A DNA stretch of 64,000 nucleotides, taken from NCBI GenBank assembly GCA_002269645.1, contig NIVC01001128.1, positions 186,001 to 250,000 of the forward strand. The letters run 5' to 3'. The notes below the pieces were generated by a model, which worked only from the letters and a program-made list of their open reading frames with translations, did no database searches and was not told the DNA's origin. Within the stretch, counting starts at the first letter, position 1; every line of letters begins with the position of its first letter. Positions 14,248 through 20,200 of the stretch are shown here, piece after piece. The translations under genes and the position numbers were made by a program. The stretch is from Macrostomum lignano. Its lineage: Eukaryota.

Positions 14248-17200
14248 TTAGTCTGAGTCTGAGTCGACCACGCGGTTCCGTTCGGCCTGCAGCCACTCGG
14301 AGTTCTCAAATAGTCGGGCGAAAATACGATTATTCGTGGCGCTGTCCTTGCCGAAGTACTGCACCTGAATCTTCTGTCTGACCCTCAGCTGCAGGCTCTT
14401 GGCGGTTTTGATCTGAAATAAACAAATAGAGATTAAGTCAACGGAGTAACTAACTGATTAACAAAATAATTAACTAACTATCTAACTAACTAACTAACTA
14501 ACTAACTAACTAACTAACTAACTAACTAACTAACTAACTAACTAACTAACTAACTAACTAACTAACTAGCTAACTAACTAACTAACTAACTAACTAACTA
14601 ACTAACTAACTAACTAACTAACTAACTAACTAACTAACTTAACTAACTAACTAACTAACTAACTAACTAACTAACTAACTAACTAACTAACTAACTAACT
14701 AACTAACTAACTAACTAACTAACTAACTAACTAACTAACTAACTAACTAACTAACTAACTAACTAACTAACTAACTAACTAACTAACTAACTAACTTAAC
14801 TAACAAACTAACTAACTAACTAACTTACAAACTACTAACTAACTAACTAACTAACTACTAACTAACTAACTAACTAACTAACTAACTAACTAACTAACTA
14901 ACTAACTAACTAACTAACTAACTAACTAACTAACTAACTAACTAACTAACTAACTAACTAACGAACTGACTGACTAACTAACTGATTAACTAACTGACTA
15001 ACTAACTGACTAACTAACTAACTAACTCACTAACTAACTAACTAACTAACTAACTAACTAACTAACTAACTGACTAACTGATTGACTAACTAACTATCTA
15101 ACTAACTAACTAACTAACTAACTAACTAACTAACTAACTAACTAACTAACTAACTAACTAACTAACTAACTAACTAACTAACTTAACTAACAAACTAACA
15201 AACTAACTAACTAACTAACTAACTAACTAACTAACTAACTAACTAACTAACTAACTAACTAACTAACTAACTAACTGACTAACTGATTGACTAACTAACT
15301 ATCTAACTAACTAACTAACTAACTAACTAACTAACTAACTAACTAACTAACTAACTAACTAACTAACTAACTAACTAACTAGCTAACTAACTAACTAACT
15401 AACTAACTAACTAACTAACTAACTAACTAACTAACTAACTAACTAACTAACTAACTAACTAACTAACTAACTAACTAACTAACTAACTAACTAACTAACT
15501 AACTAACTAACTAACTAACTAACTAACTAACTAACTAACTAACTAACTAACTAACTAACTAACTAACTAACTAACTAACTAACTAACTAACGAACGAACT
15601 GACTGACTAACTAACTGATTAACTAACTGACTAACTAACTGACTAACTAACTAACTAACTAACTAACTAACTAACTAACTAACTAACTAACTAACTAACT
15701 AACTAACTGACTAACTGATTGACTAACTAACTATCTAACTAACTAACTAACTAACTAACTAACTAACTAACTAACTAACTAACTAACTAACTAACTAACT
15801 AACTAACTAACTAACTAACTTAACTAACAAACTAACAAACTAACTAACTAACTAACTTACAAACTACTAACTAACTAACTAACTAACTAACTAACTAACT
15901 AACTAACTAACTAACTAACTTAACTAACTAACTAACTAACTAACTAACTAACTAACTACTAACTAACTAACTAACTAACTAACTAACTAACTAACTAACT
16001 AACTAACTAACTAACTAACTAACTAACTAACTAACTAACTAACTAACTAACTAACTAACTAACGAACTGACTGACTAACTAACTGATTAACTAACTGACT
16101 AACTAACTGACTAACTAACTAACTAACTAACTAACTAACTAACTAACTAACTAACTAACTAACTGACTAACTGATTGACTAACTAACTATCTATCTAACT
16201 AACTAACTAACTAACTAACTAACTAACTAACTAACTAACTAACTAACTAACTAACTAACTAACTAACTAACTAACTAACTAACTAACTAACTAACTAACT
16301 AACTAACTAACTAACTAACTAACTAACTAACCAACTGATTAAATCACTCACTTTAGTTGGGTCCGAGTGCAGACTATTGTTGGCGATGAAGAAGACTTCC
16401 TGACGGCCTTCAACTTTGACCCAGACGCCCTCCTTGGTGATCTTGATGATCTCGGCCTCGTAAGTTTTGCCATATTCCAGCTTGTTCCTGCTGCGCCGCC
16501 TGGCAAGCCACAGGACGACTTTCCTGTACACCCAGTGCAGGATGATGTACAGGAAGCCAAGGACGGACCCGATACCGACGGCGGCAAATAAGCCGGCAAA
16601 GTAGCTGAAGCTGAGCGGGATTTTGTCAGCCGGATTGATCACTGATGTCGGGCACCGGTTCAGGCCGAAGTACTTCTTCTCAAGATTCTGATACTCGGAA
16701 TAGCGAACAGAGTTAAGAAACGACCTTACTTCGTTAGTGAACGGGTAGTTCTTGCGAATCATGGTGGTCTCGTACACCACCTCTTCAAGCGGCCCGTATG
16801 TCTTCAGTACGCAGTCTTTGGTCTTCTGATAGTTAATTGTTGTAGCAGAATCGATGTAAACATAGCGATCGTTGGATTTGAGTGTTTCGACAGCGGCTGC
16901 GGCTGACGGCTGTAGCATGTCTTCTGGCCAATTCGCTTTGGCTGTCTGCACCAGATTCGGCCAGCGTCTCTGCACGGTTGTGTAGGCGATTGAGTTGTTC
17001 CAAAATATGGCTCGATAAGATGTGGCATTTTGCAACTCGGTGATGGTTGTGAACGGAACCGACTCGTCCGGCTTAACTAAAAACGGCACCAAGTTGCTCA
17101 CGTAGGTGGTCATGTAGAATAGCGTGGAAAACCACAACAGCAGGGTGAATAAACGAGCTGACGGCTTGCGGGGCTCTGTCTCCACCTTGGACATCAGGAA

Positions 17201-20200
17201 GGAGCTCAGTACAAGGAAGAATGATGCCATGAAGCTGAACATTGGCTTGTCGCTTTTATTAGGACTGATCTTGTCGCTGACAAACAGCGTGACAGACAGT
17301 ACAACCATGGAGAACATGATGCTGATCCATACGTACCAGGAGAACGGATAGAATACATTGAAGAAGTCCAACGGATGAATCGTCCTCTTGAGTAGCATTA
17401 GCAGGCCAGACTGCACCAGATTGATTGACATATCCGCCGCCTGAAGTCGGTCCGACAGAGCAAACATGAAATTTGCCGACATGTCTGCCCTCTGAAATTT
17501 TACAAAGAGGCGATACAATATCATTGAGAAATTCTAGCGATCGAGGGGGTCTTTATCCAAAATATTCAAACTTTAAACTGCATGACTACCAGCAGGCTTA
17601 ATCGAACTGATGGGGCACTTACATTCTCGGTGAGGTATCCCATAATTCCAGTCCAGCTTCCGTCTGGCCTTTTCGAACCGTAGCTCCCATCTTCGGCAAG
17701 CAAAATCTCGAATTGAAAGCCGAGATTCCTCTGCATCAGCAGGATGAGATCGTAACTGATGCCGGTGAGTTCTCCGTTCAAGTTTTTGTATAGATAAGGC
17801 TGGTCCTAAAAGCAAATATATAAATTCATTGTTGTACTTCTGCTCTAAGGGGCGTTCGTTTTCTAGCTATGTAGCTAGTGCCTATGAGCTAATGAAAGGC
17901 CACTTCCAATACACCAAACTGATTATTCAACTCTTCCAAGGCGCTTGGGATTCACAAAGGTGTCCACTCAGCGTCCTTAGCGACGCCTTCGACTGTTGTC
18001 CCCGACCGTCACCAAGGACGCAGGCTGGTTGCCATAGCGACAACTATACGCCTGATGCTGAGCAAGCATAAAAGCGCCGTGCTCTGTGTACCAGACAACA
18101 TCGAAGTTAGTACTCGACTGTCTTTTGGCTGACGAAATCATCATAGACACGGCCTTTGGATTGCCAAAATATTGCTTGGGCATATTTTTGCATACTTTTG
18201 CATACTTAGTAAAACAGCTTTTTACTTTCGGTTCAGTAGTAAGGAAGAATACGTAAGCTATTTTATAAAAATAAAGGCAGCTGAAATGACTTTGATAAGT
18301 TTAGAAGCCAAAGCTTGCAGGCGTAAACAACTTGCTAATTGGTTCAGCAGTAATGTACATTAGCCAGTCCGCTGAAATGTACATGGCAGCTTTCGGCTGG
18401 AATTCCGAGAAAGGCAATAAAAATCGGGACGGCTTGGGGGGATAGGGTGGAAAGGTGCAGTTGGGGGGTTTAAGCTGGGGGCGGGGGTAGCGCAAGCAAC
18501 CGCGGTACTAAAGGGACCACAATCGTAAACTAGAAAAGAATTCTACTGTTTGTTCTATCGGGCTAAATGTCCTTTTAAGCTTACCAGAACACCAACAAAT
18601 CGAATCAGAGAATTTTTAATCGTTGTGGTCTTAAAATAATCCACTTTGTAGGCGGGCGTAGCGTTCTGTATCCAGGTGCCGGTCTTGGACAGGAAGTCGC
18701 TGTCTGGCAGGGTCCTCTCGGTGGTCATGACGTTCACCGTCAGGCCCTCTCTGATGCCCCGACGATAGGAAAAGTAGCCGCTCTGCCCGTTTATGGATGT
18801 CTTTAAAGAATAAGTTCGGATGCAAATTATTGTTAGTGCTTTTGCTTTTAGAAGATTCTAGAAACCTTTAGTCTTAGATTAAAAGTATGAAATAGAAAAC
18901 AAAGTGCATGAAGTAGAGGACAAAGTGAAGTAGAGGACAAAGTGAAGTAGAGGACAAAATGAAGTAGAGGACAAAATGAAGTCAAGCACAAAATAAAGCA
19001 AAGAACAAAATGAAGTAGAGGACAAAATAAAGCAAAGAACAAAATGAAGTAGAGGACAAAATGAAGTAGAGGACAAAATGAAGTAGAGGACAAAATAAAG
19101 CAAAGAACAAAATGAAGTAGAGGACAAAATGAAGTAGAGGACAAAATGAAGTAGAGGACAAAATAAAGCAAAGAACAAAATGAAGTAGAGGACAAAATGA
19201 AGTAGAGGACAAAATGAAGTAGAGGACAAAATAAAGCAAAGAACAAAATGAAGTAGAGGACAAAATGAAGTAGAGGACAAAATGAAGTAGAGGACAAAAT
19301 AAAGCAAAGAACAAAATGAAGTAGAGGACAAAATGAAGTAGAGGACAAAATGAAGTAGAGGACAAAATGAAGTAGAGGACAAAATGAAGTAGAGGACAAA
19401 ATGAAGTAGAGGACAAAATGAAGTAGAGGACAAAATGAAGTAGAGGACAAAATGAAGTAGAGGACAAAATGAAGTAGAGGACAAAATGAATCCACACTTA
19501 CACTCTGCAACCCAGTAATCAGGGTGAGATTATCTCTTGATTTGCAGGTTATTATCGAGGCAACAAAATGACGAAAGCAATCCTTCAGGTATACTTTTTC
19601 TAATTCAGTGCTGTTGTATCTGCCGAGCTTATCGAGGGAGAACGTGTACACAATGGCCGAGCTTCGACGAATGTTGGCCAAGTATTGCTGCTTGTCCTCC
19701 TAAACATTTAGAGGTGAAATGATTTAGACAGCAGGCCATTGCGGTTGTTGCAAATTATTCAGATTGAAAAAGATTTTGTTGGAAATTGTTCGTGTTTGGA
19801 AATTTTTCCGTGGGAAATTTTCCTGGTTAGTAATTTTCCGGGTGGGAATTTTCCGGGTTGGAAAATTTCCAGGTTTCAAATTTTCTTTGGTTAATAAAAT
19901 CTAGCTTAACAAATAATAAAAAAATGTTCAATAGATACCAACCAAACTGGGCAGCACGAAGATGTCTTTATCGGTGAGGGCTCCCGCTGGACCGCTCTGA
20001 AAATTTTAGGAGACGCATGTATAATAACCTACGATAAAGTTATTAGACGCATGTATTTCAATCCGGTTATTGAAATGCAAGGAGTTCTAGGGAGGGAATT
20101 CCAATTTATTGGAATTGGATTCGCGGGAAATGTCTATGGTAGAAGAAAGTGTTCAATCAACCCATAGATCTTATATTCCCTAGATAGGCCCTTTGTATTG

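What the first reader, a model, noticed from the sequence alone, without database searches (positions are those of the whole stretch)
14248..17491. Ligand-gated ion channel (iGluR family) fused to a PNPase-type S1 RNA-binding domain in its cytoplasmic tail
Seen in sequence: right after M4 and a basic linker (WLARRRSRNK), the large exon continues LEYGKTYEAEIIKITKEGVWVKVEGRQEVFFIANNSLHSDPTK. A canonical phase-0 intron (GTGAGT at 16351 ... TTTCAG at 14413) then joins a 165-nt last exon not shown in the ORF track, IKTAKSLQLRVRQKIQVQYFGKDSATNNRIFARLFENSEW...*. Established knowledge: in iGluR topology the post-M4 tail is cytoplasmic. The spliced ~70 aa match the S1 domain of eukaryotic polynucleotide phosphorylase (PNPT1) as I recall it (LEFG..Y.A.I..I...GV.VK, KIK, V.Q.IQV.YFG.D), roughly 40% identity by eye. 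I know of no described iGluR with an RNA-binding domain. Both halves are open, in frame and correctly spliced across 1.9 kb of microsatellite, which argues for selection rather than debris. Inference: a membrane receptor that could tether RNA, ribosomes or RNA-decay factors at the synapse or sensory membrane, coupling ligand sensing to local RNA control. Alternatively the OB fold is a co-opted protein-interaction module.
Basis: partly seen in the sequence, partly recalled or inferred. Interest (0 to 1): 0.92.

Follow-up and report, generated by a model that had tools for sequence, protein, structure and literature searches.

The report
Flatworm glutamate-receptor channel with PNPase S1 tail
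A flatworm (Macrostomum lignano) gene encodes a glutamate-receptor-type ion channel whose inner (cytoplasmic) end carries a folded RNA-binding-type domain copied long ago from the mitochondrial RNA-degrading enzyme PNPase; the fusion is real, is shared by free-living and parasitic flatworms, and I found no paper that describes it.

Summary
On the minus strand, a 10-exon, 881-aa gene (22786..14248, all introns GT-AG) encodes a divergent iGluR (PF10613 and PF00060 above threshold). Its M4 helix runs in the same exon into an S1/OB-fold domain. That domain is split by a phase-0 intron made of 1.9 kb of (TTAG)n.

The tail matches the human PNPT1 S1 domain (E=2e-6 alone; E=1.9e-15 as a family profile). 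It folds as an S1 barrel (pLDDT 87), and all listed Foldseek hits are S1-type OB folds.

The same M4+S1 architecture occurs in Macrostomum paralogues, a monogenean and several tapeworms. In those proteins the S1 tail is the best-conserved segment.

The intron inside the domain sits at the same codon boundary in every flatworm gene I could read, and also in a genuine metazoan PNPase gene. A tapeworm gene keeps all three PNPase-type introns. This points to exon shuffling of the last three PNPT1 exons onto an iGluR before rhabditophoran flatworms diverged.

Function is untested. I favour binding of RNA or another polyanion directly under the channel. A co-opted protein-interaction module is the main rival. 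No paper describing the fusion was found.

The parts
22672..22786 (-). Exon 1: start codon and signal peptide (MLSPASLLCLLLLALCPLPQPGSAQ...)
   Evidence: Gene model built; matches P0001
21976..22116 (-). Exon 2 (N-terminal extracellular region)
   Evidence: AG/GT flanks
21632..21880 (-). Exon 3 (N-terminal extracellular region)
20954..21138 (-). Exon 4
19943..19996 (-). Exon 5 (weak donor GTTGGT)
19502..19699 (-). Exon 6. The long form is used here. The annotated P0001 uses an internal donor, but the long form aligns with paralogue P0002 (LLDCMNHFLKSF vs YLKDCFRHFVASI).
18585..18800 (-). Exon 7
17623..17805 (-). Exon 8: first lobe of the ligand-binding domain (PF10613). It is missing from the public model P0001.
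   Evidence: PF10613 residues 383-483, 58.6 bits
16352..17491 (-). Exon 9 (residues 448-827): rest of the ligand-binding domain, M1, pore loop, M3, S2 lobe, M4, basic linker and the N-terminal half of the S1 domain, all in one open frame
16481..16621 (-). M4 transmembrane helix plus its basic helical extension (residues 738-784, ...ILHWVYRKVVLWLARRRSRNK)
   Evidence: Aligned to M4 of GluK5/GluN1; AF2 predicts one continuous helix
16352..16480 (-). S1 domain, N-terminal half (residues 785-827, LEYGKTYEAEII...HSDPTK): strands beta1-beta3
14413..16351 (-). Intron 9, phase 0, GTGAGT...TTTCAG. 97% of it is a (TTAG)n microsatellite (14447..16336). Its position is conserved in flatworm paralogues/orthologues and in a genuine PNPase gene.
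14311..14412 (-). S1 domain, C-terminal half (residues 828-861, IKTAKSLQLRVRQKIQVQYFGKDSATNNRIFARL): strands beta4-beta5 with the PNPT1-type YFGxD motif
14248..14310 (-). Non-conserved acidic C-terminal extension (FENSEWLQAERNRVVDSDSD) and the TAA stop
   Evidence: 12.6% identity; pLDDT 62-67
14166..14171 (-). AATAAA polyadenylation-type signal, 77 nt after the stop

Best explanation
SHOWN. The window (Macrostomum lignano) carries an intact 10-exon gene for a divergent ionotropic glutamate-receptor-family subunit. Its last transmembrane helix (M4) continues as a roughly 12-residue basic helix and, after an 8-residue connector, into a compact five-stranded S1/OB-fold domain at the cytoplasmic C-terminus. 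That domain is homologous specifically to the S1 domain of metazoan mitochondrial PNPase (PNPT1). It was acquired by exon shuffling: the last three PNPT1 exons were joined to the M4 exon of an iGluR gene. A tapeworm gene still keeps all three PNPase intron positions and phases, while Macrostomum keeps only the last. The fusion predates the split of Macrostomorpha from Neodermata and has since diversified into paralogues. The S1 tail is the most conserved part of these proteins.

INFERRED. In the tetrameric receptor, four S1 domains hang about 2 nm below the inner membrane face around the channel axis. I think the most likely role (about 45%) is that they still bind a polyanion, most probably single-stranded or structured RNA. 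They would use the canonical beta2/beta5 face, where an exposed aromatic (W804), a basic residue (K806), the Asp of the YFGKD motif and a K/R before beta5 are conserved. This would hold RNA or RNPs at the receptor, or make the receptor sensitive to them. The channel part keeps the ligand-contacting Arg and an acidic residue in an IDSA motif, so an amino-acid-type extracellular ligand is plausible.

The confidence of 0.45 applies to the whole statement, including the inferred RNA/polyanion role. For the shown part alone (a real, conserved, PNPT1-derived fusion) my confidence is about 0.95.
For: Gene and iGluR identity:
- 881-aa model, all introns GT-AG.
- PF10613 58.6 bits and PF00060 72.3 bits.
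- GluK5, GluN1 and GluA2 aligned across residues 328-771, with the ligand Arg conserved.

S1 identity:
- Human PNPT1 S1 E=1.9e-6 for the single tail.
- E=1.9e-15 for the family profile, against 3e-4 for the next S1 protein and 0.04-2 for bacterial PNPases.
- AF2 pLDDT 87, five strands.
- All 50 listed Foldseek PDB hits are S1-type OB-fold proteins, TM about 0.7; human PNPase is 38% identical.

Geometry: AF2 of M4 plus tail gives pLDDT 87.7, a continuous helix through RKVVLWLARRRS, then the barrel.

Conservation:
- 19 further proteins share the M4+tail region (or the tail alone in short fragments). Named sources are M. lignano paralogues, Cichlidogyrus, Schistocephalus, Spirometra, Rodentolepis, Hymenolepis and Anoplocephala.
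- Tail mean pairwise identity is 30.0%, against 27.5% (M1-M3), 17-19% (ligand-binding lobes) and 16% (N-terminal domain).

Origin:
- A phase-0 intron lies at the same column in the window, paralogue L001, R. nana L002, Cichlidogyrus L003 and a genuine PNPase gene L004.
- R. nana also shares the other two PNPase introns, including a 57-nt exon and a phase-2 intron.

Polyanion binding:
- 11 of 15 tails have net charge of at least +2 and pI 8.9-10.3.
- An aromatic residue occupies the E. coli F22-equivalent position in 10/15, Asp the D64-equivalent in 10/15, and K/R the R68-equivalent in 10/15.
- The human PNPase S1 domain binds structured RNA (PMC11851098).
Against: - No experiment or transcript from M. 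lignano itself was available. The junction rests on a public gene model, homology across the splice and conserved intron position.
- Two of the five classical S1 nucleic-acid-contact positions (E. coli F19 and H34 equivalents) are not conserved: H34 is mostly Pro/Ala and F19 is acidic or polar.
- 4 of 15 tails are neutral or acidic.
- Pfam S1 stays below its gathering score.
- The human PNPase S1 domain also mediates a protein contact with SUV3, so a pure protein-binding role fits the parent domain equally well.
- The M3 gating motif is degenerate (TYVSNLVPF vs SYTANLAAF) and the Q/R-site equivalent is Met. Channel function is therefore not assured.
- No trematode or triclad member was identified.
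Confidence: 0.45

Rival explanations
1. The fusion is real and conserved, but the S1 barrel has been co-opted as a protein-interaction, assembly or trafficking module. It might bind a scaffold, a cytoskeletal or auxiliary protein, or neighbouring S1 domains to form a cytoplasmic ring under the pore. On this reading it no longer binds nucleic acid.
For: - The H34 and F19 equivalents of the classical RNA-binding surface are lost.
- The human PNPase S1 domain contacts SUV3 helicase, and the three S1 domains contact each other in the closed state (PMC11851098).
- iGluR C-termini in other animals act mainly as protein-docking sites (established knowledge).
- 4 of 15 tails are not basic.
Against: - An exposed aromatic plus basic pair on beta2, and the Asp and K/R around beta5, are kept in about two thirds of members.
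- The tails are on average more basic than genuine PNPase S1 domains.
- No partner is known.
Confidence: 0.35
2. The S1 domain acts as a membrane-proximal sensor of acidic lipids or small polyanions (PIP2, polyphosphate, nucleotides) and modulates gating. This would resemble TRPM2, whose NUDT9-H domain derives from a mitochondrial enzyme and became a ligand sensor (analogy from general knowledge).
For: - The domain sits only about 20 residues after the membrane on a basic helical extension.
- A conserved exposed Trp and basic residues also suit interfacial binding.
- The domain derives from a mitochondrial enzyme.
Against: S1 domains have no known precedent for lipid binding. Nothing in the sequence singles out this ligand class over RNA.
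Confidence: 0.12
3. The tail is non-functional debris: a captured PNPase gene fragment that happens to be in frame in this copy, or an artefact of assembly or gene prediction.
For: - The intron is an unusual 1.9-kb microsatellite.
- No M. lignano transcript was examined.
- All three homologous-protein searches returned nothing.
Against: - The same architecture appears in independent assemblies of at least seven flatworm species.
- It also appears in contigs with uninterrupted ORFs across all intron sites (L005, L006).
- The tail is the most conserved segment.
- The fold is predicted with high confidence from a 15-sequence alignment.
- Intron position and phase are conserved.
- There is no other PNPase exon in the window.
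Confidence: 0.03

Closest known systems
Ionotropic glutamate receptors (kainate GluK5, NMDA GluN1, AMPA GluA2; Pfam PF10613 + PF00060)
   Same: - Signal peptide and a large N-terminal extracellular region.
- Bilobed ligand-binding domain interrupted by M1, pore loop and M3, followed by M4.
- The ligand-contacting Arg is conserved.
- Best PDB matches are at E=1e-30 to 1e-22 over residues 328-771.
   Different: - Only about 20-25% identical to any solved iGluR.
- The SYTANLAAF gate motif is degenerate (TYVSNLVPF).
- Met occupies the Q/R-site equivalent.
- The GluA2 T480 equivalent is Phe.
- Above all, a folded S1/OB domain follows M4. Known iGluRs have disordered C-terminal tails with short docking motifs there (general knowledge).
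- The 2018 metazoan iGluR phylogeny does not mention flatworms anywhere in its main text.
S1 domain of metazoan mitochondrial polynucleotide phosphorylase (PNPT1; PDB 9kjr, 9kjt, 9njb)
   Same: - 38% identity over about 75 residues.
- Family-specific motifs LEFGxxYxAxV and VxYFGxD.
- The same five-strand barrel.
- The same three intron positions and phases.
   Different: - No RNase PH, PNPase or KH domains are attached.
- The domain is cytoplasmic and membrane-tethered instead of sitting on a mitochondrial exoribonuclease ring.
- There would be four copies per assembly instead of three.
- The position aligned by my residue count to the SUV3-contact residue D713 is not conserved.
- A Trp replaces the Met at the beta2 position.
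Channels fused to enzyme-derived cytoplasmic domains (TRPM2 with NUDT9-H, TRPM6/7 with an alpha-kinase), recalled from general knowledge and not tested here
   Same: An ion channel that has acquired a globular cytoplasmic domain from a soluble enzyme (mitochondrial in the case of NUDT9), placed directly after the last transmembrane helix.
   Different: A different channel superfamily and a different domain. In TRPM2 the domain is a proven ligand sensor; here no ligand is known.

Membership tests
Ionotropic glutamate receptor superfamily | Ligand-binding domain, lobe 1 (Pfam PF10613 Lig_chan-Glu_bd) above the gathering score | tested here: met
   58.6 bits vs GA 30, residues 383-483. Exon 8 must be included; the public model P0001 lacks it.
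Ionotropic glutamate receptor superfamily | Channel domain (Pfam PF00060 Lig_chan) with M1, pore loop, M3 ... M4 order | tested here: met
   72.3 bits vs GA 30.8. A continuous alignment to GluK5, GluN1 and GluA2 covers M1 to M4.
Ionotropic glutamate receptor superfamily | Conserved alpha-carboxylate-binding Arg (GluA2 R485) and alpha-amino-binding acidic residue (GluA2 E705 / GluN1 D732) | tested here: inconclusive
   The Arg is aligned (ALSDR vs TAERE). IDSAT resembles GluN1 WDSAV, but HMMER places it one residue out of register. The T480 equivalent is Phe.
Ionotropic glutamate receptor superfamily | SYTANLAAF gating motif in M3 | tested here: inconclusive
   TYVSNLVPF: 4 of 9 identical (Y, N, L, F), read from the alignment. 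It is more degenerate in cestode members.
Ionotropic glutamate receptor superfamily | Ligand-gated cation current | not testable with these tools
   Needs heterologous expression and electrophysiology.
S1 RNA-binding domain (OB fold; Pfam PF00575) | Pfam S1 model above the gathering score | tested here: not met
   17.6 bits vs GA 22. A genuine PNPase (P0020) also shows no S1 hit at E<=0.01, so this criterion is insensitive for PNPT1-type S1 domains.
S1 RNA-binding domain (OB fold; Pfam PF00575) | Five-stranded S1-type beta-barrel | tested here: met
   AF2 pLDDT 87, strands 9-17, 21-26, 32-36, 60-68, 75-79. All 50 listed Foldseek PDB hits are S1-type OB-fold proteins, TM 0.6-0.77.
S1 RNA-binding domain (OB fold; Pfam PF00575) | Classical nucleic-acid contact residues (E. 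coli PNPase F19, F22, H34, D64, R68; numbering from memory of Bycroft et al. 1997) | tested here: inconclusive
   The F22, D64 and R68 equivalents are each kept in 10/15 members. The F19 and H34 equivalents are lost; F19 is also absent in human PNPT1.
S1 RNA-binding domain (OB fold; Pfam PF00575) | Binds RNA | not testable with these tools
   Needs EMSA, fluorescence polarisation or CLIP.
Homology to the PNPT1 S1 domain specifically | Significant sequence similarity to PNPT1 S1, stronger than to other S1 domains | tested here: met
   Profile E=1.9e-15 for human PNPT1, against 3e-4 for ribosomal protein S1 and 0.04-2 for bacterial PNPases.
Homology to the PNPT1 S1 domain specifically | Shared intron positions and phases with a PNPase gene | tested here: met
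   K|I phase-0 intron shared by the window, L001, L002, L003 and PNPase gene L004. R. nana shares all three introns with L004.
Polynucleotide phosphorylase (the enzyme; the name UniProt gives the Schistocephalus members) | Two RNase PH domains, PNPase alpha domain and KH domain | tested here: not met
   None found in the window protein or family members. There are no PNPase-like exons elsewhere in the window. These proteins are not PNPases.

The most novel reading that the evidence does not exclude
Flatworms possess a class of ligand-gated channels whose cytoplasmic face is a ring of four RNA-binding S1 domains. A surface receptor would then directly hold RNA or RNPs at the membrane, coupling chemical sensing to local RNA storage, translation or decay. 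Alternatively its gating would be tuned by cytosolic RNA, much as TRPM2 is gated through its mitochondrial-enzyme-derived NUDT9-H domain. This would be the first direct physical link between an ionotropic receptor and RNA. It would also be a flatworm-specific receptor class in tapeworms and monogeneans, with no sign of it outside flatworms among the named sources, so probably absent from their vertebrate hosts.
Probability: 0.3. Interest if true: 0.95.

Novelty: new variant of a known kind. Interest (0 to 1): 0.8.

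Why it matters
- iGluR C-termini are regarded as disordered docking tails. 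A folded, conserved, RNA-binding-type domain placed directly under the pore is an unexpected architecture. It makes the question of whether an ionotropic receptor can bind RNA directly testable with a small soluble domain of about 100 aa.
- It is an unusually clean case of ancient exon shuffling. Three intron positions and phases are preserved between the donor gene (PNPT1) and the recipient, and progressive intron loss is visible among lineages.
- The family occurs in tapeworms and monogeneans of medical and veterinary relevance. It was not seen in any other named organism, so it is a candidate parasite-specific receptor class.
- Public annotation is currently misleading. Schistocephalus members are named 'Polyribonucleotide nucleotidyltransferase 1', and the M. 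lignano model lacks an essential ligand-binding exon.

Tried and rejected
- The search for homologous proteins returned nothing for the tail, the 434-aa C-terminal half or the tail alignment. All family members came from the single search of protein representatives. Trematodes and triclads could therefore not be surveyed with a profile.
- Pfam S1 as a membership criterion: sub-threshold and shown to be insensitive.
- Hypothesis that the S1 exons belong to a nearby or overlapping PNPase gene: rejected. tblastn with a nematode PNPase, and with the ORFs of the spider-type PNPase locus, finds no other PNPase exon in the 64 kb. In addition, M4 and the S1 N-half share one exon.
- dN/dS: P0001 and P0010 have no DNA on record. 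The two tandem copies in L001 differ at only 10 sites (pN/pS 0.07 over the exon, with no differences in the tail), which is too few to be informative for the tail. I used region-wise conservation instead.
- Organisms of the Logan and ENA contigs (P0003, P0005, P0008, P0009, P0011-13, P0015, P0018) could not be identified. The ends of L005 and L006 carry no poly(A), so their transcript origin is only inferred from uninterrupted ORFs.
- Literature searches for an iGluR-S1 or iGluR-PNPase fusion found nothing. An S1-domain census paper does not mention receptors or channels.

Full report
**1. What is in the sequence**

A 1140-nt exon (17491..16352) translates without a stop from the ligand-binding domain through M1, M3 and M4 into ...HWVYRKVVLWLARRRSRNK-LEYGKTYEAEIIKITKEGVWVKVEGRQEVFFIANNSLHSDPTK. 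A GTGAGT donor follows at 16351.

The next 1939 nt are almost entirely a 4-nt microsatellite (TRF 14447..16336, 472 copies, 93% matches). They end in a pyrimidine-rich TTTCAG acceptor. The 165-nt last exon (14412..14248) reads IKTAKSLQLRVRQKIQVQYFGKDSATNNRIFARLFENSEWLQAERNRVVDSDSD*. An AATAAA lies 77 nt downstream.

I rebuilt the whole gene as ten exons, all with AG/GT flanks, giving 881 aa.

**2. The channel half**

The 881-aa model scores above the Pfam gathering thresholds for both iGluR domains: PF10613 58.6 bits and PF00060 72.3 bits. Against the PDB, residues 328-771 align to GluK5 (E=7.6e-30), GluN1 and GluA2 across M1 to M4.

- The Arg that binds the ligand alpha-carboxylate is aligned (ALSDR).
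- An IDSAT motif resembles GluN1 WDSAV, which contains D732.
- The M3 gate motif is degenerate (TYVSNLVPF).
- The Q/R-site equivalent is Met.

This is a genuine but divergent iGluR-family subunit. Channel activity is plausible, not proven. By iGluR topology (established knowledge), and given seven Lys/Arg in the 15 residues after M4, the C-terminus is cytoplasmic.

**3. The tail is an S1 domain of the PNPT1 type**

- The 97-aa tail alone finds only human mitochondrial PNPase in the PDB (E=1.9e-6, residues 633-704).
- Pfam S1 is sub-threshold (17.6 vs 22 bits). A true nematode PNPase also lacks a Pfam S1 hit, so that test is insensitive here.
- A profile of 15 family tails (A2) hits human PNPT1 S1 at E=1.9e-15. 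The next S1 proteins (ribosomal S1, Rrp5) reach only about 3e-4, and bacterial PNPases 0.04-2.
- AlphaFold2 on that alignment gives a confident five-strand barrel (pLDDT 87, pTM 0.73).
- All 50 listed Foldseek hits in the PDB are S1-type OB-fold proteins (TM about 0.7). Human PNPase shows 38% identity.
- A model of M4 plus tail (pLDDT 87.7) predicts one continuous helix through the membrane and the basic stretch RKVVLWLARRRS, then an 8-residue connector, the barrel, and a low-confidence C-terminal helix.

The S1 domain is therefore held close under the membrane, four per tetramer.

**4. It is a conserved family, not a one-off**

The exhaustive HMMER search with the last 182 aa found P0001. This is a 783-aa Macrostomum lignano protein (UniRef A0A1I8HFD1), 99% identical and using the same splice junction. 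That identifies the window's organism.

It also found 19 further proteins that match the M4+tail region, or the tail alone in short fragments. The named ones are:

- Two more M. lignano paralogues.
- The monogenean Cichlidogyrus casuarinus, which UniProt names 'S1 motif domain-containing protein'.
- The cestodes Schistocephalus solidus, Spirometra, Rodentolepis nana, Hymenolepis microstoma, Hymenolepis weldensis and Anoplocephala perfoliata.

UniProt names the Schistocephalus members 'Polyribonucleotide nucleotidyltransferase 1', evidently because of the tail.

The full-length members carry Lig_chan, with or without Lig_chan-Glu_bd, in Pfam. The two remaining significant hits that are not iGluR-like are genuine PNPase sequences (P0020 and P0022). 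One repeat protein (P0021) looks like a spurious hit to me.

Two contigs of unknown organism (L005, L006) carry uninterrupted 857- and 861-aa ORFs across all intron sites. That is what spliced mRNA would look like.

Among seven full-length members the S1 tail is the most conserved region. Mean pairwise identity is 30.0%, against 27.5% for M1-M3, 25.8% for M4, 17.5% and 18.9% for the ligand-binding lobes, and 16.1% for the N-terminal domain. This is strong evidence of purifying selection on the tail.

**5. How the fusion arose**

The intron inside the S1 domain is phase 0 and falls at the same alignment column in four flatworm genes:

| Gene | Junction |
|---|---|
| Window | TK\|IK |
| Macrostomum paralogue L001 | EE\|EA |
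| R. nana L002 | LK\|VY |
| Cichlidogyrus L003 | IK\|FP |

P0022 turned out to be the split-off 3' end of a genuine PNPase gene. It lies on a genomic contig (assembly GCA_021605075.1), with an RNase PH-containing model immediately upstream on the same strand. From memory this is a spider assembly; the tool does not name the organism.

Its S1 domain is encoded by three exons: |EAPKLEYGNTYNAKIVEIR| (57 nt), |DNGVMV...LSHKK| and |IQHPSAL...*|.

- The last intron (KK|IQ, phase 0) coincides exactly with the flatworm intron. Both lie 18 codons before the Y of YF(G/D).
- The R. nana receptor gene has all three. A phase-0 intron precedes EQWALVPG, then comes a 57-nt exon that ends in a phase-2 intron within the homologous K/R codon, then the phase-0 intron.

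The simplest history is that the last three exons of PNPT1 (or of a duplicate) were placed downstream of an iGluR M4 exon and spliced to it. This happened before Macrostomorpha and Neodermata diverged. Macrostomum and Cichlidogyrus later lost the first two introns, which is why M4 and the S1 N-half share an exon in the window. No other PNPase exon exists in the 64 kb.

**6. What it probably does (inference)**

Shown: fold, origin, position and constraint.

Not shown: any ligand.

Points for retained nucleic-acid or polyanion binding (with the E. coli numbering recalled from Bycroft et al. 1997):

- The outward-facing beta2 positions carry an aromatic residue in 10/15 members (Trp in 7; W804 in the window).
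- The next outward-facing position is basic in 8/15.
- The Asp of YFGKD (E. coli D64 equivalent) is kept in 10/15.
- A K/R before beta5 (R68 equivalent) is kept in 10/15.
- 11/15 tails have net charge of at least +2 (pI 8.9-10.3), slightly more basic than genuine PNPase S1 domains.

Points against:

- The H34 equivalent is mostly Pro/Ala.
- The F19 equivalent is acidic or polar, although human PNPT1 also lacks that Phe.
- Four tails are not basic.

The parent domain in human PNPase binds structured RNA but also contacts SUV3 helicase and its sister S1 domains (PMC11851098). A protein-binding role is therefore a serious rival.

My estimates:

| Role of the tail | Probability |
|---|---|
| RNA or polyanion binding | about 0.45 |
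| Protein or assembly module | about 0.35 |
| Lipid or small-polyanion gating sensor | about 0.12 |
| Debris or artefact | about 0.03 |

**7. Comparison with what is known, and novelty**

The protein is a member of the iGluR superfamily (domain criteria met). It carries a domain homologous to PNPT1 S1 (sequence, fold and intron criteria met). It is not a PNPase, because it has no RNase PH or KH domains.

I found no paper describing an iGluR with an S1 or PNPase-derived domain. The main metazoan iGluR phylogeny does not mention flatworms in its main text. A census of S1-domain proteins does not mention receptors or channels. Database entries exist, but they are unrecognised or misnamed.

I therefore rate this as a new variant of a known kind: an iGluR with an unprecedented folded cytoplasmic domain. 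Interest is high because the architecture is surprising to specialists, is anciently conserved, comes with a clean exon-shuffling history, and offers a directly testable hypothesis.

Noticed in passing
window 17623..17805 and 19502..19607 (minus strand): The public M. lignano protein model (P0001, UniRef A0A1I8HFD1, 783 aa) skips exon 8, which encodes lobe 1 of the ligand-binding domain (PF10613). It also uses an internal donor in exon 6. The 881-aa model restores both and aligns better with paralogue P0002.
   Followed up: yes
window introns 22117..22671, 21139..21631, 18801..19501, 14413..16351: Four of the nine introns of this gene are largely filled by different tandem repeats: an 18-mer x25, (TATC)n x100, a 17-mer x34 and (TTAG)n x472. 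The last intron offers hundreds of decoy TTAG acceptor-like sites upstream of the real acceptor.
   Followed up: partly
window 1..12700 (minus strand): Tandem copies of a gene whose ORFs read like aldehyde oxidase / xanthine dehydrogenase. They show a 2Fe-2S motif [13 protein letters not shown] and FAD- and molybdopterin-type segments, with near-identical exon sets around 3.5-5.9 kb and 10.4-12.7 kb. Judged by eye from ORF translations only.
   Followed up: no
window 25197..27525 (+), 28300..30100, 34158..56700 (+), 59756..62662 (+): Other content seen in the ORF list, named by eye only:
- a glutamine-synthetase-like gene;
- a reverse-transcriptase fragment (retroelement);
- a very long plus-strand gene whose introns hold many minisatellites;
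- an acyl-CoA-dehydrogenase-like gene, also interrupted by minisatellites.
   Followed up: no
L002 (Rodentolepis nana UZAE01000077.1) 3001..23574: The 1263-aa model P0017 merges two tandem iGluR-S1 genes. A partial S1 tail (VYNALDLGLAEGDSIEITYFE) sits in the middle of the protein, so the family is tandemly duplicated in this tapeworm.
   Followed up: partly
L001 (M. lignano NIVC01000064.1) 8286..14615 vs 15650..20182: Exons 3-7 of the paralogue P0002 gene are present twice in tandem. The copies differ at about 10 nucleotides in the large exon, and only the second copy is followed by the last exon. This is either a recent partial duplication or an assembly artefact.
   Followed up: partly
P0007 / P0026 (Schistocephalus solidus, UniRef A0A0X3NVQ4, A0A0X3PEC1): These 949-950-aa iGluR-like proteins are named 'Polyribonucleotide nucleotidyltransferase 1' in UniProt, although they lack all catalytic PNPase domains. 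The name was evidently transferred from the S1 tail.
   Followed up: yes
P0014, P0016 (Anoplocephala perfoliata, Hymenolepis weldensis): A cestode subgroup has a variable middle region of the S1 domain, between beta3 and beta4. P0014 carries an insertion of about 25 residues there and P0016 is shorter. This suggests that loop tolerates remodelling.
   Followed up: no
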